Positions 13,590-32,108 of a DNA stretch of 64,000 nucleotides are shown one piece after another. The stretch's first letter is position 1. Each line of letters starts with the position of its first letter. The translations under genes were made by a program, and so were the position numbers. Source of the DNA: Isurus oxyrinchus. Lineage: Eukaryota. The notes under the pieces are model-generated. The model searched no databases. It was not told where the DNA came from and saw only the letters and a list, made by a program, of their open reading frames with translations. Location of the stretch: NCBI GenBank assembly GCA_026770705.1, contig JANJGN010001184.1, positions 1 to 64,000 on the forward strand. The letters run 5' to 3'.

Positions 13590-13875
13590 GAGATAGGGAG
13601 GGTTACAGGGGCTGGAGGAGGTTACAGGTATAGGGAGGGGTGTAGGGGTTGAAGGTGGTTACAGAGATGGGGAGGGTTGTGGGGGTTGAAGGTGGTTACA
13701 GAGATGGGGAGGGTTGTGGGGGTTGGAGGTGGTTACAGATATAGGGAGGGGTGTAGGGGTTGAAGGTGGTTACAGAGATGGGGAGGATTGTAGAGGCAGG
13801 TGGAGGCTGCCTTAGGGAGGGTTGTAGGGGCTGGAGGAAAGGGACAGAGAGAGGAGGTTACAGATATAGGGAGGG
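13590..13875 (-). repeat. 37-bp minisatellite, inverse of the 16517-17925 array
   Basis: ggaggttacagagatagggagggttgtaggggctgga units. Confidence 0.8.
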
Positions 13876-14949: not shown

Positions 14950-15550
14950 CCCTTTCTATCTCATGGATTAGAATATAAGGGGGCAGAGGTCATGCTTCAG
15001 TCTACATAAAGCCCTGGCTAGACCACACCTGGAGTCACTGTGAGACATTCTGGGCCCCACACCTTAGGAAGGATATATTGACCTCGGAGGGAGAGCAGTG
15101 TCAGTTTACCAGAATGAGACCGGGACTCCAAGGGTTAAATCACAAGGAGAGATTAAACACAAACTCGGCTTGTATTCCTTGGAAGTTAGAATGTTAAGCA
15201 GGAGATTTGATGAAAGTTCGCATGATAATAAGGGGAACAGATTGGGGGCGATAAAGAGAAACCATTTCCCCTGGTTGGGGGGAGTCTGGGACTCGGGGTC
15301 AGAGCCTAAAAAGGAATTAAATTAGGAAGTACAAAGGGTGGGAGAAATTTGGAACGGTCTTCCCCAAACTGAAACTGATGCACGATCAAGTTGTTCATTT
15401 TAAACCTGTGAGACTGATAGATTTTTGTTATCCAAAGGTATTAAAGGAGATGGGACAAAGGCATATGGGGCTAGTTTGCAGATCAGCCATGAACTCTTTG
15501 AATGGTGGAGCAGGCTCGAGGGCCAAATGGCCTCCTCCTACCCTTATGTA
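14950..15550 (+). mobile_element. CR1-type LINE 3' fragment
   Basis: gaatataagggg...ctagaccacacctggag...gatcagccatga...ggccaaatggcctcctcct. Confidence 0.75.
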
Positions 15551-15962
15551 ATAGAAACTTACCTGTCAGAAGCCAGTTTATGTTGATGTGAGTCTGAGTC
15601 GATGACTGAACCCAGTTGGTAACTTGTTCCATACAAAGCAAGAACGTTCATGCCCTTCAATGTTCCTGGATAAACCATGAACAAAGCTGGTGACAGACAG
15701 TCTCCACATGGTAAACACTGACCGATCAACACATGACATGGCTGTTAACCCCTAAACCTCAGCGTAAATCAGTTCCCCCTCGAGGCCCCTTGTCCGAAAT
15801 AAAAGCAACGCACACAATTTGTAAAATAGTAAGTGTCTGGCAGGAAGGAGGAGCAATGAGAGGAGTAAGGGGTTAGGGGGCGTGCGCTTCACCTGATTTG
15901 CCGACATAAGAACCAGCCCCTCTGTTTTTGCTATGTTGTGTTGCGTCAATATGAACACATAT

Positions 15963-16153
15963 TTGCACAAGGTGAAGGGCGTTGCGGAGGGACTGATAGT
16001 TCTCGGCGCCAGACAGTCAATGTCCCAGTGACCTTACTGCTGGTCCCAGGCCAGTGGGACAGGGAACATCGACACTGCAATATCCAGAAATGGGTGTGAT
16101 ACCACACAGCTACCCACCCGCGGCTGTCCCCTTCAAGTGTTTCAGGTATAAGA
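15963..16153 (+). promoter_or_regulatory. Putative hepcidin proximal promoter
   Basis: C/EBP-like TTGCACAA at 15963-15970, BMP-response-like GGCGCC at 16005-16010 followed by the SMAD box AGAC, and TATAAGA at 16147-16153, about 75 bp before the ATG. Confidence 0.6.
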
Positions 16154-16223
16154 GCAGGAAGCTCCTCTAGTTACAAACCAAAGCATCAAAGCAGAGCCAG
16201 AAGATCAGAAGAGACAGGCAGAG

Positions 16224-16315
16224 ATGGGAAGCTCCCAGATGAAATGGCGACTTGTCTTGTTCACTCTGACTTTGCTGCTCTCCCTGCAGCTGAGTCACTT
16301 CTTCTCCTTGTCGAG
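16224..16315 (+). CDS. hamp: Hepcidin exon 1 (signal peptide MGSSQMKWRLVLFTLTLLLSLQLSHFFSL..); frame is 1 nt out of phase with the donor
   Basis: Basic n-region plus Leu-rich core downstream of a TATA box; donor GAG|gttaag at 16315/16316. Confidence 0.75.
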
Positions 16316-16516
16316 GTTAAGCTAAGAGATGTCCCTCTGGGTGAGGTGTTTCTTGCACATGACTATACGTCTACCACCCAGATAGACTGGTCTCTTCCGC
16401 AGTTTGATATTATTATGTTCGTGCCTTTAATATTGTCGCCCTCTATGAATTTAACATCATTTCCTTCTGTCGTTTCCCCTGAAATTCTCATTCTTGTTTT
16501 CAATCCCTCCTCAGCG

Positions 16517-17925
16517 ACTCCCTATCTCTGTAACCTCCTCCAGCCCGTACAACCCTCCCTATCTCTGTAACCTCCTCCAGCCCCTACAACCCTCCCTATC
16601 TCTGTAACCTCCTCCAGCCCCTACAACCCTCCCTATCTCTGTAACCTCCTCCAGCCCCTACACCCCTCCCTATCTCTGTAACCTCCTCCAGCCCCTACAA
16701 CCCTCCCTATCTCTGTAACGTCCACCAGGCCTTACAACCCTCCCTATCTCTGTAACCTCCTCCAGCCCCTACACCCCTCCCTATCTCTGTAACCTCCTCC
16801 AGCCGCTACAACCCTCCCTATCTCTGTAACTTCCTCCAGCCCCTACAACCCTCCCTATCTCTGTAACCTCCTCCAGCCCGTACAACCCTCCCTATCTCTG
16901 TAACCTCCTCCAGCCCCTACAACCCTCCCTATCTCTGTAACCTCCTCCAGCCCCTACAACCCTCCCTATCTCTGTAACATCCTCCAGCCCCTACAACAAT
17001 CCCTATCTCTGTAACATCCTACAGTCTCTACAACCCTCCCTATCTCTGTAACCTCCTCCAGTCCCTATAACCCTCCCTATCTCTGTAACCTCCTCCAGAC
17101 CCGACAACCCTCCCTATCTATGTAACCTCCTACAGTCCCCACAACACTCCCTATCTCTGTAACCTCCCCCAGGCCCCACAACCCTCACGATCACTGTAAC
17201 CTCCTCCAGACCCTACAACCCTCCCTATCTCTGCAACCTGCTCCAGACCCTACAACCCTCCCTATCTCTGTAACCTGCTCCAGACACTACAACCCTCCCT
17301 ATCTCTGTAACCTGCTCCAGACCCTACAACCCTCCCTATCTCTGTAAAATCCTCCAGGCCCCACAACCCTCACAATCACTGTAACCTCCTCCAGCCCCTA
17401 CAATCCTCCTGAACTCTATAAGCTCCTCTCCACACTATAACTCTCCCTATCTCTGTAACCTACTGTGGCCCCTACAGCAGTGTCTATTTTGGTAACCTCC
17501 TCCAGCCTCTACAACCCTCCCTACATCTGTAACCTCCTCCAGCCCCCACAACCACCCCATCTCTGTAACCTCCTACAGCCCCTACACACCTCCCTACCTC
17601 TGTAACCTCCTCCAGCCCCCACAACTCCCCCATCTCTGTAACCTCCTACAGCCTCTACAACCCTCCCTATCTCTGTAACTTCCTACAGCCCTTACAACCC
17701 TCCCTATCTCTGTAACCTCCTACAGCCTCTACAGCCCTCCCTATTTCTGTAACCTCCTCCAGCCCCTACAACCCTCCCTATCTCTGTAACCTCCTACAGC
17801 CTCTACAACCCTCTCTATCTCTGTAACTTCCTACAGCCCTTACAACCCTCCCTTTCTCTGTAACCTCCTACAGCCTCTACAGCCCTCCCTATCTCTGTAA
17901 CCTCCTCCAGCCCCCACAACCCTAC
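16517..17925 (+). repeat. 37-bp minisatellite (about 38 copies) in hamp intron 1
   Basis: Unit ctccctatctctgtaacctcctccagcccctacaacc. Confidence 0.95.
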
Positions 17926-17939
17926 CTAAATCACTGGTC

Positions 17940-18545
17940 TGAGTCTCACTCCAGGGAATTCAGTCCCATAATGTAGATCAACGCTCCGTGCTGAGGGAGT
18001 GCTGCACTCTCAGAGGGTCAGTAGTGTGGAAGTGTGCACTATTGGAGGGACAGTACTGAGGGAGTGCTATACTGTCGGAGGTCAGTACTGAGGGAGTGCT
18101 GCTGTGTCGAAGGGTTAGTACTGAAATAGAGCTGCACTGACGGAGGGACAGTACTGAGGGAGCGCAGCACTATCGAAGGGTTAATACTAAGGGAGTGCTG
18201 CAGTGTCAAAGGGTTAGTACTGAGGGAGCGCAACAATGTTGAATGAGACATTAAACTGAGTCCCCCGTCTGCCCTCTCGGGCGGGTGTGAAAGATCCCAC
18301 AGCCACTATTTGGAGGAAGAGCAGGGGGTGTTCTCCCCGGTGTCCTGGGACCAATATTTATCCCTCACCCAACATCACCAAAAACAGATGATCTAGGCCA
18401 TGATCACATTGCTATTTGTGGGATCTTGCTGTGCACAAATCAGCTGCCACATTTCCTACAGTGTGAGTGCACTTCAAAAACATCCTTCAGTGGCTGTGAA
18501 ATGCTTTGGGATGTGGTGAAAGGCGTTAGAGAAATGCAAGTCTGT
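17940..18545 (+). mobile_element. Deu-domain SINE with internal 33-bp expansion
   Basis: gctgagggagtgctgcact repeats, then tgagacattaaac...aaagatccc...atttatccctca...gaaatgcaagtc. Confidence 0.75.
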
Positions 18546-18642
18546 CCTCCTCCCCCTCTCTCTCCTGTACCTCTCTCTCTCTCTCTCCCTCTCCCTCAAT
18601 CCTCCTCTCACTTTCTCCCTGATAAATTCTTTCTTTTTGCAG

Positions 18643-18699
18643 GTTGACACTGCTTTAGGTTCTTCGACGATTGAGAAATCTGTGGATTCCCCGGACACG
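18643..18699 (+). CDS. hamp: Hepcidin exon 2 (pro-region VDTALGSSTIEKSVDSPDT)
   Basis: Strong acceptor ttctttctttttgcag, 57 nt, phase 0/0, donor ACG|gtaggt; in frame with exon 3. Confidence 0.75.
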
Positions 18700-20239
18700 G
18701 TAGGTGGAAATTCATTCCTTATTTTAAGGTTTCTCCCTGCTCGTTTCTTCCACAGAAAGTTTTCTGATTTCAAGCTGATTTCAGTGGCAGTCTGTCTCGG
18801 TTATACTCAGGAGGCATGTTTGAAATCGAGCCCCCCCCGCCCCCACTTTTTTTGCAAAGCTGGGAAGAGACAATTCCAAGGAAGTGAACATGTCCCCACA
18901 GGAATTTTAAATGTAACCCACGCCGGGAATAGTGAGAGGGAGACTGATCCAGCCTGGGAGTGGGTTAAAGAGAGGCTGGGAGTCGAGAGTCGGAGAGAGG
19001 GATGGAATGGGGGAGGGAGGGATTGGAAGAGAGAGACAGAGAGTGGGACGGGGAGGGGTGAAAGGGAAAGAACATAGGTGGGAGAGAGTGACAGAGGGAG
19101 AAATTAAAGAAGAGATGCAGAGTGAGGGAAAGTGAAAAGGGAAGAGAGATTGTCCAAGAGAGAGAAATTAACAGGAAAGGGAGAGTTACAGAGTGAGCGA
19201 AAGGTACAAAAATAGTGTGAGAGAGAGGGAGAGATACAGAGTGGGAGAAGGAGACAGGGGAGAGAGAGGGAGAGAGACAGGAAAAGGGAGAGAGGAGAGA
19301 AAGATTGGGAGAGAGGGCAATTGAGCGGAAGAGTAGGAGAGAGAGAGACGGGGAGAGGAGGAGTGGATGAGAGGAAGCGAGAGAGAGATATGGAGCAGGA
19401 GAACACCTCCTCCGGTCCCGATGTTCCTCCAAAATCTCTGACATTACTGCATCTCCCGGGTCCCCCTGATTCCCATCGCTCCACCATTGGTGGCCGTGCC
19501 TTCAGCTGCCTGGGGCCCTGAGCTCCGGAATACCCTCCCTTAACCTCTCTGCCTCTCTCTCTTTCTCTCTCTCTCTTTTAAGACGTTCCTTAAAAACTGA
19601 CATCTTTGACCAAGCTTTTGGTCACCTATCCCTAATATCTCCATATGTGACTCAGTGTTAGACTTCTCTCTGATTTACGCTCCGGTAATGTGGGCTGGGA
19701 CATTTTGCAATATCAGAGGCGCTGTGTAAATGCAAGTTGTGAGTGTTATGTGGAAGGGAGACCCCAGGCGGCAGTCAGTGCCAGTGACTGGAGTCATTGT
19801 GTGCAGACCATATCTAATCTCTCCGAATGCACAATCGGTTTGACTGTCAGCCAAAGCATTTTTGATATTTGATCCTTCTAACTGTTTATAACCAGGCCTA
19901 CATCAAACACCGAGAGGCCGGTTAATCAACAGACACCTTAGAGGATCGAGTGAAAGACAAAGAGGACTTGCATTTCTCTAGCGCCTTCCAACCCATCAGG
20001 ACGTCCCAAAGTGTTTCGCAGACAATCAAGTGCTTTTTTCTTTCATGTGAGGTCACTGATGTAATGTGGGAAAAGAATCAGCCATTGGCGCACAGTAAGA
20101 TCCCACAGACAGCAGCATGATAATGACCAGCGCGCTCCCAGTACTTGCACTGCAAGTGTCAGTTCAGGGTGTCTGCTCGATTCTCTGCGATTCTCAGCTC
20201 TGAGTTAAAAGGACCACGAGGCGTAATTGAGGAATGACC

Positions 20240-20955
20240 GAGCTATCGGAGGGTCAGTATTGAGTGTGTGCTGCATTGTCAGAGGGTCAGTACTGAGGGA
20301 GTGCTGCATTGTCAGAGGGTTAGTACTGAGGGAGTGCTGCATTGTCAGAGGGTCAGTCTTGAGGGAGTGTTGCACTGTCGAAGGGTCAGTACCGGCGGGG
20401 GATGCACAGTCGGAGGGTCAGTACTGAGGGAGTGTTGCATTGTCAGAGGGTCAGTCTTGAGGGAGTGCTGCACTGTTGGAGGGTCAGTACTGAGGATGTG
20501 CTGCATTGTCAGAGTCAGTACTGAGGGAGTGCTGCACAGTCGGAGGGTCAGTACTGAGCGGGCGCTGCACTGTTGAAGGTGCTGTCTTTCAGATGAGACA
20601 TTAAACTGGGGCAACCAATCTGCCCTCTCAGGTGGATATAGAGGATTCCATGGCCACAATTTAGATGAAGTGCGTCAGGAGTTGGGGGTATGTGTGGAGG
20701 GGGTGGTGGGGGGTGGATGGGGTGGAGTTATGTCTGCTTTCCTGGGGCAAACATTTATCCCTCAACTGACATTGGTAAAAAACTGAAAATCGGGGCCATT
20801 ATCACATTTCTGTTTGTGGGATCTTGCTGTGCGTGAATTGCCTGCTGCGTTTCCTACATTACAGCGGTGAGCCCACTTCAGAAAAAGTCCTTCCTTCAGC
20901 TGTGGAACACTTTGGGCCATCCTGAGGAGGGGAAAGGCGCTATAGAAATGCGCCA
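20240..20955 (+). mobile_element. Deu-domain SINE with internal 33-bp expansion (hamp intron 2)
   Basis: About 10 33-bp units followed by the SINE body ending aaaggcgctatagaaatgc. Confidence 0.75.
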
Positions 20956-21040
20956 TCCTCCTTCCAATGACGCGCCTGATTGAAATGATGCCTTCTTTCT
21001 TTCCGGAATGTTCTCACCTATTGTGCTCCTGCTTTTCCAG

Positions 21041-21151
21041 GGCTCCTTGCTGCAGCGCCAGAAGAGAATGGGCAGATTCTGCAGATTCTGCTGTAACTGC
21101 TGTAATTCGAGAGAATCAAATGAGACTTGTGGTCTCTGCTGTAGATATTAG
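21041..21151 (+). CDS. hamp: Hepcidin exon 3: GSLLQRQKR|MGRFCRFCCNCCNSRESNETCGLCCRY*
   Basis: Acceptor gcttttccag, furin site RQKR, 8 Cys in the hepcidin C-x2-CC-x-CC-xn-CG-x-CC pattern, stop TAG at 21149-21151. Confidence 0.93.
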   Translation, partial: GSLLQRQKRMGRFCRFCCNCCNSRESNETCGLCCRY

Positions 21152-21494
21152 ACCCTGGCCTCATTCACGCAAGGTCATCCTGCACCATGCCACAGCCTCT
21201 CCCCTCCTTATCATTGCTTAGCAATCTATTTCACACAGGCCCTGTTCATTAATTCCAACTGAAACTTTACCTGCGTTTTACAGCAGGGAAAGAAGCCATT
21301 CGGCCCATCTGCTCCATGCTGGTGTTTCTGCTCCACACGAGTCTCCGCCCACCCCTTCTCCATCTCACCCCATCACCATATCCTTCTATTCATTTCTCCC
21401 TCGTGTGTTTATCCAGCTTCCCCTTAAATACATCGACACTATTCACCTCACGTGACTGTGTTTGTGTCTGTCTTTATGAGCGTGTGTGTGTGTG

Positions 21495-21945
21495 TGTGTG
21501 ACTGTCAATATGTGTGTGTCAATGTGAATGAGTGAGTGTGTCAGTGTGTCTGTGTGGGTGTGTGTGACTGTCAGTGTGTGTCAATGTGAATGAGTGAGTG
21601 TGTCAGTGTGTCTGTGTGGGTGTGTGTGACTGTGTCAGTGTGTGTCAATGTGAATGAGTGAGTGTGTCAGTGTGTCTGTGTGGGTGTGTGTGACTGTGTC
21701 AGTGTGTGTCAATGTGAATGAGTGAGTGTGTCAGTGTGTCTGTGTGGGTGTGTGTGACTGTGTCAGTGTGTGTCAATGTGAATGAGTGAGTGTGTCAGTG
21801 TGTCTGTGTGGGTGTGTGTGACTGTGTCAGTGTGTGTCAATGTGAATGAGTGAGTGTGTCAGTGTGTCTGTGTGGGTGTGTGTGACTGTGTCAGTGTGTG
21901 TCAATGTGAATGAGTGAGTGTGTCAGTGTGTCTGTGTGGGTGTGG
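21495..21945. repeat. TG-rich minisatellite, unit about 64 bp, about 7 copies
   Basis: tcaatgtgaatgagtgagtgtgtcagtgtgtctgtgtgggtgtgtgtgactgtgtcagtgtgtg. Confidence 0.9.
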
Positions 21946-23814
21946 GTGTGTGAGTGTGCAAGTGAATGTGTGAGGAATCTTATGACTAAGTCATTTGAAT
22001 GGATGTTACTGGGGTTAATGATAGTTAAAATTCAGAGAGATGTAAAGCGGGCTCCTGATTTTGCTGCTTTATGCTCCCGGGCACAGATTCACCCCGACAA
22101 TGTGTTCATGATTCACCATTATCTTGTCGGGACTTTAATTGTAAAGATTATGATTTGTAAAAAAAAATGAATAAACAACTTCTGTCTTCACAAAGTGTCT
22201 GGCTTGGTATTTCAGGCTACTTGTCTCCCCCTCACCCTCCCCCCCCACCATGCCCCCCACACCAGGGAACAATTGTCCCCCCTTCCTCTGAAGTTCTGGG
22301 TAAAGATCAGCTTTGTTCAATGCAAACTGTTCCGACATCGAGAACGTTGTTACAAATATCTCACAAAGGGCACACGCCATGATAGCCCACTTTCAACAGA
22401 TTTTACCAGTTGACCAGGTAGAAAAGCTTTTCATAAACCACAACGTAGGTGTTCAATTCTTGCTGCTGTTTGCTTAATGCTCTCATAACTGCTATAACCT
22501 CTCTAGTTCCACTACATAACAACACAAACATAAATAAACAGAAGCAGGAGTAGGCCTTTTGGCCTCCCAAGCCTGCTTGTCCATTCAATTTGAACCTGGC
22601 TCCTGCTGAAAGTTATTTAAGTTGAAGCGATAAAGCCATCAGGTGCAAGGATTAAAATGTAAGCAAAGGAAAAATAATACTTAGAGATGAGAGTTAAAAT
22701 CAGTTTCTGTCAAGTATTATAGTGAGGCCCATTGCTCTGGATTCCTTCTTTCCAGAGTGAAGGGTTTGAAACTAGGAGTCACATTCAGCAGCTGCATTGT
22801 CTTCTCTAGTCGACTGTTTGGAGGTTGCCTGTAGATGTGAATCAGCAGGTCAGCAGCTTTGAGGAGTGAGTGAAGGTCCCTTTTATTTACAGGATCTGCC
22901 ACAGGATGTGCAGGAATATTCCTGCTGAATCCCCCATCCTTGTATTCATGAAGGTTTTGAAACTGGAAGTCATATTCAGCAGCTGCAATGGCCTTTGTAG
23001 TCAACTGTCTGGAGGTTGCCTGTACAGGTGGACTCGGCATGTCAACAGCTTTGTTGGGCAGGGGACACGGGTAGTGAAGGTCCCTTTTCTTTAAAGGCTC
23101 TGCCAGTGCAACACTTGATGATCCTGGGTCAAAATCATGTATCACCCTCCCCAACAGCACTGTGGATGTGCCCTATGGAGGTTCCTTGGCTTCGACAAGC
23201 AGCCTACCAGCTCTACTCTCAATTCCTCTTCGCACTTGCTTCCTTCCTCCTCTGGTCTTTACTTTGTTATAGTGTTAGTGTCCGCTCTGCCTTTTTTGTT
23301 GCTTTCCCAATTCTTCCCACCAACTCTCTCTGGCTTGATCCTTCTCTGTGCTCATCTCATTGGTTTGAGTTTCTATCCGTTCATTGACCTGGTGTAATCT
23401 GAAACTGGTGCAATCAGGTAGGGGTGGGGGGGTTGGCGCTGGCCGTGGGTGGTGATACACGGCTACCTTTTTACCAAAATTCTTTCACGGGATGTGGACA
23501 GCGTTTGTTACCTGTTCCTGACTGACCCCTTGAGAAGGGGGTGCTGAGCTGTCTTTTCGAAGTGCTGCAGTTCACCTGGTTTGACTGGGCTGTGGCGGGT
23601 TTTGATATAACTCAGTGGCTTGCTCGGCCATTTCAGGGGCCAGTTAAGAGTCAACCACATTGCTGTGGGTCAGGAGTCACACGTAGGCCAGAATGGGTAA
23701 GGACGGCAGGTTTCCTTCCCCAAAGGGCATTAGTGACCCAGATGGGTTTTTGCAACAATTGGCCTTAGTTTCATGGTCACCATTACTGAGACTAGCTTCG
23801 CATTCCAGATGTCA

Positions 23815-24890
23815 CATCCAGTCGTGGACAATCAAACAACTCACTGGAGGAGGAGTCTCCACAAATATCCCCATCCTCAATGATGGAGGAGCCCAGCACA
23901 TCGGTGCAAAAGACAAGACTGAAGCATGCGCAACAATCTTCAGCCAGAAGTGCTGAGTGGGTGATCCATCTCGGCCTCCTCCTGAGGTCCCCAGCATCAG
24001 AGATGCCAATCTTTAGCCAATTCGATTAATTCCACGTGATATCAAGAAAGGGCTGAAGGCACTGGATATTGTAAATGCTCCAGGCCCTGAAAATATTCTG
24101 GCAATAGTACTGAAGACTTGTGCTCCAGAACTTGCTGCGCCCCTAGCCAAGCTTTTCTGGAATTTTCTAGTACAGCTGCAACACTGGCAACTACCCGGCT
24201 ATGGGGTACGTCCTGTACACAAAAAGCAGGACAAATCCAACCCAGCCAATTACCCAGCAGTCTATTCTTGATCATTACTAAAGTGATTGAAGGGGTCATC
24301 AATAGCGCTTTCAAGCAGCACCTGCTTAGCAAGAACCTGCTCACTGACGCTCAGTTTGTGTTCCACCAGGATCATTCAGCTCCTGCCCTCATTACAGCCT
24401 TGGTTCAAACATGCACAAATGAGCTGAACTCCAGAGGTGAGAGGGACTGCCCTTGACATCAAGGCAGCATTTGACTGAGTGTGGCAAATCAAGGAGCCCG
24501 AGCAAAACTGGAGTCAATGGGAATCGGAGGAAAACTCTCCGCTGCTTGGAGTCATACCCAGCACAAAGGAAAATGGTTGTGATTATTGGGGGTCAATCAT
24601 CTCAGTTCCAGGACATCACTGCAGGAGTTACTCAGGGTAGTGTCCTAGGCCCAACCATCTTCAGCTGCTTCATCAATGACCTTCCTTCCATCATAAGGTC
24701 AGAAGTGGGGATGTTTGCTGAAGTTTGCACAATGTTCAGCATCATTCACGGCTCCTCAGATACTGAAGCAAGTTATGTCCAAATGCAGCAAGACCTGGAC
24801 AACATCCAGGCTTGGGCTGACAGATGATAAGTAACATTCATGCCACACAAGTGCCAGGCAATGACCAGCTCCAACAAGAGAGAATCTCAC
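23815..24890 (+). mobile_element. Degenerate non-LTR retrotransposon RT region (CR1/L2 group)
   Basis: GVTQGSVLGPTIFSCFINDLPSIIRSEVGMFA and QQDLDNIQAWAD, with frameshifts. Confidence 0.85.
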
Positions 24891-30394: not shown

Positions 30395-30717
30395 AGGACC
30401 GGACTCAACAAGACAGATTGCAGGTTTACCAACAGAAAGTGAACAACAATTTATATTTAAAGGGAAGAGAGTGCTGGTTAATCAGCAAGTGGTCTCTGAT
30501 TGGAGGAGGTGTTGCCATGGAAAATAATGTGTGTGAGATGTAAAGTTTAGACAGCTTGTCTCTTCATTCAGCAACAATCAAATAAAGATCAGTTAACTTC
30601 TATCGACTGTGAAGCACTTTGAGAGGCATGAGAATGTGGACACTGAGAACGGGCTGCACTGTCAGAGGGTCAGCGCTGAGGGAGTGCTGATGTAGAATGA
30701 AGGGTGTCTGTACTTAC

Positions 30718-31014
30718 CTTGCACAGTTAGTACGAGGGTCCGCTCCGATGAAACAGATGGATATCTCACTCTGCAGCTGAGAGTGTGTCCGTGGTGTTTG
30801 AGTGATGGGATCAGGGTCAGAACAGAAGTATAGGACAGAGTGACACCATGCTGAGTTACAGTGTTTGAGACTGATCCACGTACGTCAGTGGGAGTGTCCC
30901 AGGTTAAGACAGGTGCTGCTGTTCCATTGCACGTTGTGTTGAAGGTGCAGCTTACATCCACAGGCTTTCCTGCAATAATTTCAGCAGGGAATATCGTGGG
31001 TTTATCTGTGAAAT
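30718..31014 (-). CDS. Gene B C2-set Ig exon (open, 297 nt)
   Basis: DFTDKPTIFPAEIIAGKPVDVSCTFNTTC...LSCRVRYPSVSSERTLVLTVQ; ag/gt intact; differs from 51134-51430 at only 2 residues by my alignment. Confidence 0.9.
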
Positions 31015-31742
31015 CTAACAGACAGAGAATGGATCCTTTTAGAGAAATATAACGTGAAGCATCAGTTCAAATAGAAATCACAGTCCCACAAGAGAAAGCA
31101 CTTTTACAAGGATGATATCAGATCTGAGAGGTTACAATGATTAGGAGAGAATTTCCTGCTTTGAGACTTTGGTGTTTCTGTCTCTCAGCTTAATACACGT
31201 TCACTCCGAGACACTTGAACTGATAATAGTGGGTGAGGGTGGTGGAGCAGACCAGAGTTTGGAGTGCACTAACCCATCAGTCCCTCAGCGATCTGGGCCA
31301 TTTTTTACTTTGCAATTTGTGGGAGATTGCTGTGTGCAAATTGGTTGCTGTGTTTCCCACATTACAATAGTAACTACAATTCAGGAATCAGCTCATTGGC
31401 TGTGAAGTGATTTGGTCCATGCTGAGGTGGTGAAAGGTGCTACAGAAATGTGAATCTTTCCTCTGTCGCTAAGTCAGACTTCGAGACAGGATTAGAGAGA
31501 TCGATAGGAGTGGATAACCTGATAACATTGATGGACACAGTCAATACATTTAATCATTGATATTAAAGTGAGTATTAGAGGTTGCTTTAGGAGTGAATTA
31601 GAAGCGATCACCAGGTTATTGAGAATCAGACAGTGTGTTATAATAAGCTGTGTTTTGTGTTAATACGTAAACGTTACAGTTTGTGTTATTTCCCATGGAG
31701 TGTTGAATGTGAATTGTTGAGTAATTATAACACAGCACTTAC

Positions 31743-32108
31743 CAGAAACGTGAAGCTGGGTTACAGGGTAATAGTTATGGCTCGGACCATTGTCAAATTC
31801 TATTCTGAAAAAATAAGGTCCCGCATCTTCCCGTCTGATGTTGTTTATAATCAGGGAACAGTCGCCATCTTTCAGGTCTCCAGACAGCCGGGTCCGATGG
31901 TGGAACCGTGGTAACTCGTGACTGTGATCCTTGGAGTGAAAGGCTATAGACGATGTTCTCCATTCCTCATAATTAAACCAGACTCCACCTCACGGTTGGT
32001 TTTCCAGACACGATGGATAACTGTAATGACATGGAATCTGTACACACGAACCTTCCTGCACTGTCACCTCTCGTGGATTGTCACCTTTCTACTCTTGCGA
32101 GGGTTCAG
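31743..32108 (-). pseudogene. Gene B V-set exon V2 with two premature stops
   Basis: 366 nt with intact splice sites, SCVQIPC and YFFRIEF. TGG>TAG at 32089-32091 and CGA>TGA at 31990-31992. Confidence 0.92.

What the first reader, a model, noticed from the sequence alone, without database searches (positions are those of the whole stretch)
16224..21151. Hidden three-exon hepcidin gene missed by the ORF track
Seen: TATA, a leader exon, a 57-nt pro-region exon, and a last exon with RQKR followed by an 8-Cys hepcidin pattern, spread over 5 kb with minisatellite- and SINE-filled introns. Known: this is the canonical hamp three-exon prepropeptide layout. Exons this small are easily missed by annotation, and a probable cartilaginous-fish copy is informative for the origin of iron hormone versus antimicrobial function.
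Basis: partly seen in the sequence, partly recalled or inferred. Interest (0 to 1): 0.85.

Follow-up and report, generated by a model that had tools for sequence, protein, structure and literature searches.

The report
Shark hepcidin gene copy, one base short
This is a genuine three-exon copy of the hepcidin gene family (small cysteine-rich iron and defence peptides) in a shark-like genome. It is only one of many copies in that genome, it is an atypical long-loop type, and as assembled it lacks one base at its first exon junction, so it may be a dead copy or an assembly slip.

Summary
These are TATAAG (16147), a signal-peptide exon (ATG 16224 to 16315), a 57-nt exon (18643-18699), and a last exon (21041-21151). 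The last exon encodes RQKR followed by a 27-residue, 8-Cys peptide.

- **Family match:** exon 3 alone scores 26.8 bits (E 6e-6) on Pfam Hepcidin, against a cutoff of 27. Its best solved relative is bass hepcidin. The Cys pattern appeared in 0 of 300 shuffles.
- **Expression:** RNA-like runs of the same species cover all three exons 100 to 10,000 times deeper than the introns. They confirm the 18699|21041 junction exactly.
- **Frame defect:** With GT-AG splicing the frame stops in exon 2 (TAG 18656-18658). The RNA contigs skip 2326 bases, not 2327, so they carry one extra G that restores an 86-codon frame. That RNA may come from paralogues.
- **Peptide type:** it lacks the ferroportin-binding N-terminus and has a doubled loop with an N-E-T sequon. 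A canonical type (…SHLSICMYCC) is co-expressed.
- **Context:** Siglec V-set exons flank the gene, as MAG and CD22 flank human HAMP.

This scan has already met many hepcidin copies elsewhere in this genome. This is a new member of a known kind.

The parts
16005..16034 (+). Candidate BMP/SMAD-responsive element GGCGCC fused to CAGAC (16005-16014), with a TGACCT nuclear-receptor half-site at 16029-16034. It lies about 140 nt upstream of the TATA box. This is a lead, not a shown function.
   Evidence: GGCGCC occurs only once in the 64-kb window, and it is here. About 0.01 would be expected in the 526 nt scanned. That the BMP-RE of mammalian HAMP promoters is GGCGCC is my own knowledge.
16147..16153 (+). 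TATA box (TATAAGA). The transcription start was not mapped.
   Evidence: RNA depth rises from about 143 to about 53,000 in the bin 16094-16290.
16224..16315 (+). Coding part of exon 1 (92 nt). It encodes the signal peptide MGSSQMKWRLVLFTLTLLLSLQLSHFFSLS plus two bases (AG) of the next codon.
   Evidence: The sequence shows basic residues K7 and R9 followed by the uncharged core LVLFTLTLLLSL. RNA joints leave from 16315/16316.
16316..18642 (+). Intron 1 as assembled (GT..AG, 2327 nt). RNA contigs skip only 2326 nt. It contains the 37-nt minisatellite (16518-17928) and one interspersed repeat (17960-18560).
18642..18643 (+). Site of the one-base shortfall. The assembly reads gcaG|Gttgac (two G). 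The RNA reads TCGAG-G-GTTGAC, one G more. I infer the missing G lies at this acceptor rather than at the donor.
   Evidence: Joint 16315->18642 'skips 2326, GT..CA, both=1', depth 25,037 (X1) and 10,270 (X2). The single listed DNA contig of a related species across 16031-16434 has its only two gaps at 16149 and 16161, so none at the donor. The inference is mine.
18643..18699 (+). Exon 2 (57 nt), pro-region VDTALGSSTIEKSVDSPDT. In the frame imposed by GT-AG splicing of the assembly it reads LTLL* (TAG 18656-18658).
18700..21040 (+). Intron 2 (GT..AG, 2341 nt). It holds GA-rich low complexity and a second copy of the interspersed repeat (20230-20960). A minor alternative acceptor lies at 19895/19896.
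   Evidence: Joint 18698->21040 '(cut +1) GT..AG', depth 26,316 (X1) and 2,475 plus 13,928 (X2). Minor joint 18698->19895, depth 844 in X2..
21041..21067 (+). Start of exon 3: end of the pro-region, GSLLQ, then the RQKR proprotein-convertase site (21056-21067).
   Evidence: Pfam Hepcidin alignment covers residues 5-35.
21068..21151 (+). Mature peptide of 27 residues, MGRFCRFCCNCCNSRESNETCGLCCRY, plus stop. It has 8 Cys, an 8-residue loop (21104-21127) and an N-E-T sequon (21119-21127).
   Evidence: Cys pattern 1 observed versus 0 of 300 shuffles.
21152..21600 (+). 3' UTR. Its end was not determined. The first AATAAA is at 22170, beyond a 64-nt minisatellite (21485-21948).
   Evidence: Depth of 1.6e5 to 1.15e6 through 21600 in X1 and X2..

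Best explanation
The locus is one copy of a multi-copy hepcidin (HAMP) gene family in a shark-type genome, lying among Siglec genes.

How the family works:
- A TATA promoter drives a three-exon transcript.
- Exon 1 gives a signal peptide, exon 2 a short pro-region, and exon 3 the rest of the pro-region.
- A furin-type RQKR site follows, after which a small 8-Cys peptide is released. That peptide should fold into the four-disulfide hepcidin hairpin.

What is shown: the exons, the splice sites, the family match, and very strong spliced transcription of this gene type in the same species.

What is inferred:
- This copy's 27-residue peptide has no H/F-containing N-terminus, an 8-residue loop with an N-glycosylation sequon, and the CRFCCNCC core of bass hepcidin. 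It is therefore a defence-type (hamp2-like) peptide rather than the ferroportin-binding hormone. A canonical-looking sister (…KRMSHLSICMYCC…) is expressed in the same animal.
- As assembled, this copy is one G short at the exon 1/exon 2 junction. GT-AG splicing would give a roughly 35-codon dead end. The RNA contigs carry the extra G.

I put about even odds on two readings. One is a real lesion, meaning a young pseudogene or null allele. The other is a one-base consensus slip in the assembly, which would leave the living gene intact.
For: - Exon translations.
- Pfam Hepcidin PF06446 on exon 3 alone: 26.8 bits, E 6.3e-6, profile positions 24-52 of 53.
- Best PDB hit is bass hepcidin 1S6W, aligned as CRFCCNCC…CG.CCR with a 3-residue insertion. 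Human hepcidin 1M4F is also listed.
- The Cys pattern is unique in the window and absent from 300 shuffles.
- RNA-like runs X1 and X2 show exon bins at 5e4 to 1e6 depth, against 10 to 2,000 in most non-repeat intron bins. The canonical joint 18699|21041 has depth up to 26,316. The joint 16315->18642 skips 2326 bases at depth 25,037 and 10,270.
- The assembled exons sum to 260 nt, and the shifted frame reads LTLL*.
- Sister transcripts appear as loose ends at 21070 (…AGCCACCTCTCGATCTGCATGTACTGCTGT = SHLSICMYCC) and at 21076/21078 (MGRQQLC, MDRQQLC).
- Siglec V-set exons lie on both sides: 10352-10714 (sialoadhesin 2e-9, MAG 4.5e-8) and 31663-31989 (Siglec-5 1.4e-6; Pfam V-set and Ig_CD22).
- Earlier scan notes report many such copies in this genome.
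Against: - The Pfam score is 0.2 bits below the curated cutoff. Only exon 3 could be scored, because the joined product was left out by rule.
- The RNA contigs may stem from near-identical paralogues. Nothing shows that this particular copy, with its 27-residue F form, is transcribed. The runs are labelled RNA only as a guess and come from one sample of one study.
- No canonical 2327-base skip was among the joints shown, but 739 joints were not shown.
- Function (defence versus iron) is inferred from sequence alone. F4, C5 and F7 resemble I6, C7 and F9 of human hepcidin, so ferroportin binding is not excluded.
- No close relative was retrieved from the protein libraries.
Confidence: 0.85

Rival explanations
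1. The living gene is intact, and the missing G is a consensus or polishing slip of the assembly in a short G run at the intron 1 acceptor (or a rare allele of the sequenced individual). The locus then makes an 86-residue prepropeptide like its sisters.
For: - Every other signal is intact: TATA, a strong start context, the signal peptide, both splice-site pairs, RQKR, 8 Cys and the stop.
- All RNA junction variants shown carry the extra base.
- The premature stop would lie only 41 nt before the last junction. By the usual 50-55 nt rule (my own knowledge) it should escape nonsense-mediated decay, yet no 2327-base skip is among the joints shown.
- The difference is one unit of a G run, a typical long-read consensus error (my own knowledge).
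Against: - No DNA read of the assembled individual was seen across 18642.
- RNA may come from paralogues, and 739 joints were not displayed.
- Large tandem families usually hold dead copies.
Confidence: 0.42
2. The copy is really broken. A one-base deletion at the acceptor shifts the frame, so this is a young pseudogene or null allele in a birth-and-death gene family, and the RNA seen comes from intact sister copies.
For: - The assembled exons sum to 260 nt and the frame stops in exon 2.
- The copy also differs from the expressed variants by a 6-nt shorter N-terminal segment: F in place of QQL (loose ends at 21076/21078).
- Many paralogues exist.
Against: - There is no second disabling lesion.
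- No frameshifted junction was shown in the RNA.
- The G-run context also fits a sequencing slip.
Confidence: 0.43
3. A leaderless isoform. With GT-AG splicing of the assembly, the third ATG (16244) is in frame with exons 2 and 3 and would give a 79-residue product without a signal peptide.
For: Frame 2 reads MATCLVHSDFAALPAAESLLLLVE up to 16315, which is phase 0 and so compatible with exons 2 and 3.
Against: - Two upstream ATGs in the other frame, the first in a strong context, would be used first.
- The product has no hydrophobic leader. A furin site and four disulfides make no sense in the cytosol.
- RNA shows the +1 junction that serves the signal-peptide frame.
Confidence: 0.03
4. The peptide is an iron hormone after all. 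It would bind ferroportin despite the altered N-terminus, as a shark-specific form of hepcidin.
For: - F-C-R-F around the first Cys resembles I-C-I-F of human hepcidin (the comparison is my own knowledge).
- The only GGCGCC in the window sits in the promoter, where mammalian HAMP has its BMP element.
- The thiol Cys of ferroportin needed for hepcidin binding first appears in cartilaginous fish (PMC8235187).
Against: - The residues matching H3 and F4 are lost, and only 4 residues precede the first Cys.
- A sister transcript with the fish hamp1-type SHLSIC motif is expressed in the same runs.
- The loop is doubled and carries a glycosylation sequon.
Confidence: 0.12

Closest known systems
Teleost hamp2-type (antimicrobial) hepcidins, for example hybrid striped bass hepcidin (PDB 1S6W)
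   Same: The core CRFCCNCC and the tail CG.CCR[F/Y] are identical. There are 8 Cys and a very short N-terminus without the Q-S-H-L-S-L or DTHFPI motif. Both are multi-copy and diverge in the mature peptide while the prepro part stays similar (for this genome; for teleosts, my own knowledge).
   Different: The loop between the second CC pair and the next Cys has 8 residues (NSRESNET) instead of 5, and it carries an N-E-T sequon. Net charge is only about +2. The lineage is cartilaginous fish, so the resemblance to teleost hamp2 may be convergent.
Human hepcidin-25 / HAMP (PDB 1M4F, 2KEF)
   Same: Both have the three-exon prepropeptide gene, a furin-type site before the mature peptide, 8 Cys in the order C-x2-CC-x-CC-…-C-x2-CC, and a position beside Siglec genes (MAG and CD22 on human 19q13; my own knowledge, with the locus partly described in PMC4453067). 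The PDB match is weak (E 3.2).
   Different: The DTHFPI N-terminus needed for ferroportin binding is absent. The loop has 8 residues rather than 4. The gene is one of many copies rather than single.
Canonical (hamp1-like) hepcidin of the same species, seen only as a transcript fragment
   Same: It shares the first 30 nt of exon 3 (…QRQKRM) and the 3' end from 21148 with this copy (joint 21070->21148 and loose end at 21070).
   Different: Its mature peptide starts MSHLSICMYCC, the fish iron-hormone type of N-terminus. Its locus is not in this window.

Membership tests
Hepcidin (Pfam PF06446) | Match to the family HMM at or above the curated cutoff | tested here: inconclusive
Exon 3 alone (36 aa) scores 26.8 bits, E 6.3e-6, against a cutoff of 27 bits, over profile positions 24-52 of 53. 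Exons 1 and 2 alone give no Hepcidin hit.
Hepcidin (Pfam PF06446) | Eight cysteines in the order C-x2-CC-x-CC-x(4-5)-C-x2-CC | tested here: met
   The peptide reads C-RF-CC-N-CC-NSRESNET-C-GL-CC. Order and all short spacings are kept, but the loop has 8 residues instead of 4-5. The alignment to 1S6W needs a 3-residue insertion.
Hepcidin (Pfam PF06446) | Proprotein-convertase site R-x-(K/R)-R directly before the mature peptide | tested here: met
   RQKR at 21056-21067.
Hepcidin (Pfam PF06446) | Three-exon gene: signal peptide, pro-region, mature peptide | tested here: met
   RNA joints at 16315/16316->18642/18643 and at 18699->21041.
Hepcidin (Pfam PF06446) | Continuous open reading frame from signal peptide to mature peptide in this copy | tested here: not met
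   The assembled exons sum to 260 nt, and GT-AG splicing gives LTLL* in exon 2. The RNA of the species carries one more G, which restores the frame.
Hepcidin (Pfam PF06446) | Linkage to MAG/CD22-type Siglec genes (the HAMP locus of mammals) | tested here: met
   Siglec V-set exons at 10352-10714 (+) and 31663-31989 (-), and a C2-set exon at 30665-31066 (-). USF2 was not found in the window.
Iron-regulatory hepcidin (hamp1 type) | N-terminal ferroportin-binding segment (DTHFPI / QSHLSL before the first Cys) | tested here: not met
   Only MGRF precedes the first Cys, with no His. A sister transcript does have SHLSIC.
Iron-regulatory hepcidin (hamp1 type) | Liver expression induced by iron/BMP and inflammation | not testable with these tools
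   The tissues of runs X1 and X2 are coded. The only lead is a GGCGCC-CAGAC element in the promoter. No STAT-type TTCNNNGAA site lies in 15700-16225.
Antimicrobial hepcidin (hamp2 type) | Direct antimicrobial activity of the mature peptide | not testable with these tools
   Only sequence resemblance to bass hepcidin is available.

The most novel reading that the evidence does not exclude
The long-loop peptides with an N-E-T sequon are a shark-specific, possibly N-glycosylated branch of hepcidin. This branch would have been amplified together with Siglec genes, would be expressed at very high level beside a canonical hormone-type copy, and would still carry a BMP/SMAD-type promoter element. That would be an independent split into iron and defence hepcidins in cartilaginous fish, parallel to hamp1/hamp2 of teleosts. 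This window's copy would be one recent, perhaps disabled, offshoot of that branch.
Probability: 0.3. Interest if true: 0.55.

Novelty: new member of a known kind. Interest (0 to 1): 0.33.

Why it matters
Hepcidin is the master iron hormone of vertebrates and also an antimicrobial peptide. Cartilaginous fish sit at the base of jawed vertebrates, where the hepcidin-binding cysteine of ferroportin first appears (PMC8235187).

A family of atypical hepcidins next to a canonical one would show that the split into hormone and defence forms is older, or more repeatable, than teleost data alone suggest. I found no paper on shark hepcidin genes in the library. The only mention is hepcidin among nurse shark plasma proteins that had no counterpart in the annotated whale shark genome (PMC9207270), which fits such small exons being missed by annotation.

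This single copy adds little beyond that. Its main practical lesson is that the exon model must be checked for frame before it is annotated.

Tried and rejected
- **Spliced product:** the joined (spliced) product was never built or searched. Exons were searched one by one, by reference. In one search only exon lengths were summed.
- **The search for homologous proteins:** the stop-free 55-aa reference (region 16-55) and a 40-aa reference both returned no candidate. Teleost hepcidins with the same CRFCCNCC words were not returned either, so these blanks say little.
- **The search of protein representatives:** the exon 3 peptide gave one hit, a repetitive 105-aa protein that is not a hepcidin. 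The query is too short for a library that size.
- **ESM Atlas:** no usable hit (after three busy answers).
- **AlphaFold2:** run without an alignment on the 36-aa exon 3 peptide, it gave two helices at pLDDT 76, with the other four models at 50-62. I treat this as uninformative for a disulfide-locked hairpin and made no fold search.
- **Pfam:** exon 1 and exon 2 gave no relevant hit.
- **Rfam:** no family in 15000-23000, so the intron repeats could not be named as SINEs.
- **Promoter scan:** the sigma-70 promoter/terminator scan is irrelevant to a vertebrate gene.
- **Other copies:** no second hepcidin exon lies in the window.
- **Literature:** five searches found no study of shark hepcidin genes.
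- **Run X5:** this is another study of the same species. It has no depth on the exons, but contigs show presence, not absence.
- **Run X14:** its lack of depth over exon 3 is not a finding, because the tool filters conserved stretches.


Full report

Yes. Reading 16000-21400 shows the features below.

- A TATAAG box lies at 16147.
- An ATG at 16224, in a good start context, opens MGSSQMKWRLVLFTLTLLLSLQLSHFFSLS. Two basic residues are followed by a 12-residue uncharged core, as in a signal peptide. A GT follows at 16316.
- A 57-nt exon at 18643-18699 sits behind a long pyrimidine tract and AG, and is followed by GTAGGT. It is open only in frame 1, as VDTALGSSTIEKSVDSPDT.
- A last exon at 21041-21151 encodes GSLLQRQKR, then MGRFCRFCCNCCNSRESNETCGLCCRY and a stop.

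The introns hold a 37-nt x 38-copy minisatellite at 16518-17928. They also hold two copies of one interspersed repeat, 79% identical to each other. The 33-nt sub-repeat block of that element hits 9 loci in the window, these two among them. Rfam did not name the repeat.

The hepcidin-type Cys pattern occurs once in all six frames of the window and in none of 300 block shuffles.

**2. Is it hepcidin?**

- Exon 3 alone (36 aa) hits Pfam Hepcidin PF06446 with E 6.3e-6. The score is 26.8 bits against a curated cutoff of 27, over profile positions 24-52 of 53.
- The best solved relative is bass hepcidin 1S6W. The alignment is CRFCCNCCNSRESNETCGLCCRY against CRFCCNCCPNM---SGCGVCCRF. Human hepcidin is also listed.
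- Exons were searched one by one, by reference. Exons 1 and 2 give no family hit on their own.

**3. Transcription and splicing**

Runs X1 and X2 are one sample of one study, same species label. They are labelled RNA only as a guess, but they behave as RNA.

- Exon bins reach depths of 5e4 to 1e6, while most non-repeat intron bins lie between 10 and about 2,000.
- The contigs are spliced.
The contigs skip 2326 bases (16315->18642, with one base fitting either side), not the 2327 of a GT-AG intron. The RNA therefore reads TCGAG-G-GTTGAC, one G more than the assembly would give.
- Two minor junction variants (…TCGCG-G-G… and …GGG-G-TGAC…) have the same length.

**4. The frame problem**

- After GT-AG splicing of the assembly, the signal-peptide frame reads (R)LTLL and stops at TAG 18656-18658.
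- With the extra G seen in the RNA, the frame runs …FFSLSR|VDTALG… through to the stop, giving 261 nt and 86 codons.
- The single listed DNA contig of a related species (X14) across 16031-16434 has its only two gaps at 16149 and 16161. The donor therefore reads GAG|GT there too. I infer that the missing base is one G of the run at the acceptor (18642-18643).
- The stop lies only 41 nt before the last junction, so a frameshifted mRNA should be stable by the usual rule (my own knowledge). None was among the joints shown, but 739 joints were not shown.
- Because the genome holds many near-identical copies, the in-frame RNA may come from sisters.
- I therefore leave about even odds between a real lesion and an assembly slip.
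- A leaderless product from the third ATG (16244) is possible on paper but biologically implausible.

**5. A family, not a lone gene**

The RNA contigs show sister transcripts that leave the window's sequence inside exon 3.

- One continues after …KRM with AGCCACCTCTCGATCTGCATGTACTGCTGT, which is SHLSICMYCC. This is the N-terminus typical of fish iron-hormone hepcidins.
- Others read MGRQQLC… and MDRQQLC…, two residues longer than this copy's MGRFC….

Earlier notes of this scan report many three-exon hepcidin copies on other pieces of the same genome. Most are described as the long-loop type with a 29-residue peptide, beside Siglec genes, and some as flawed. These are leads. What I verified myself is the existence of the variant transcripts, and that this window has only one copy.

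**6. Context**

- Siglec V-set exons lie on both sides. Upstream is 10352-10714 (+), with best PDB hits sialoadhesin at 2e-9 and MAG at 4.5e-8. Downstream is 31663-31989 (-), with Siglec-5 at 1.4e-6 and Pfam V-set and Ig_CD22.
- A C2-set exon lies at 30665-31066.
- In humans, HAMP lies beside MAG and CD22 on 19q13 (my own knowledge; the locus is partly described in PMC4453067). The linkage therefore looks ancient. USF2 was not seen in the window.

**7. How it most likely works**

- Shown: promoter-proximal TATA, three exons, and splicing.
- Inferred from family knowledge: signal-peptide removal, furin-type cleavage after RQKR, and a four-disulfide hairpin.
- The mature peptide lacks the residues matching H3 and F4 of human hepcidin and has only four residues before the first Cys. 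Its loop is doubled to eight residues and carries an N-E-T sequon. Its net charge is about +2.
- A canonical-type sister is also expressed. Together these points make a defence-type role more likely than ferroportin control. No function was tested, and F-C-R-F around the first Cys keeps some likeness to I-C-I-F.
- One lead points the other way. The only GGCGCC in 64 kb lies at 16005-16010, fused to CAGAC and 19 nt before a TGACCT half-site, about 140 nt upstream of the TATA box. GGCGCC is the BMP-responsive element of mammalian HAMP promoters (my own knowledge). No STAT-type site was found.

**8. Novelty and literature**

- I found no paper on shark hepcidin genes in five searches.
- Hepcidin is listed among nurse shark plasma proteins that had no counterpart in the annotated whale shark genome (PMC9207270).
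- The ferroportin cysteine that binds hepcidin first appears in cartilaginous fish (PMC8235187).
- Protein-library searches were blank or uninformative. An alignment-free AlphaFold model was not informative either.

**Verdict**

It is a new member of a known kind, already met many times in this genome by this scan. Interest for this copy alone is modest.

Noticed in passing
window 21070-21148 (loose ends and joint): A sister transcript shares exon 3 up to …KRM and the sequence from 21148 on, but encodes SHLSICMYCC, the N-terminus of fish iron-hormone hepcidins. Other variants read MGRQQLC and MDRQQLC. Their loci are not in this window.
   Followed up: partly
window 16005-16034: The only GGCGCC of the 64-kb window sits in the hepcidin promoter, fused to CAGAC and close to a TGACCT half-site. 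This is a possible BMP/SMAD-responsive element.
   Followed up: partly
window 18698-19896: A minor spliced form joins the exon 2 donor to an AG at 19895 inside intron 2 (GT..AG, depth 844, one contig in X2).
   Followed up: no
window 10352-10714 (+): A Siglec-type V-set exon lies upstream of hepcidin (sialoadhesin 2e-9, MAG 4.5e-8). Long open frames without a Pfam match follow at once (10665-11237, 11696-12505). It may be an orphan or interrupted exon.
   Followed up: partly
window 21485-21948: A 64-nt minisatellite of 7 copies, 97% alike, lies inside or just after the hepcidin 3' UTR. RNA contigs show a TG insertion after 21568, and a T insertion after 21212 in about half (X1) to a third (X2) of the depth. 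These are allele or paralogue markers.
   Followed up: no
window 13589-13875 and 16518-17928: The 37-nt minisatellite of intron 1 also occurs 2.3 kb upstream of the gene.
   Followed up: no
window 24441-24824 (+): A reverse-transcriptase fragment (Pfam RVT_1, E 7e-5, below the cutoff) lies between hepcidin and the downstream Siglec genes. It is probably a decayed retroelement.
   Followed up: no
window 53392-59310: Four N runs of about 200-300 bases recur about every 1870 bases inside a tandem array of near-identical open frames.
   Followed up: no
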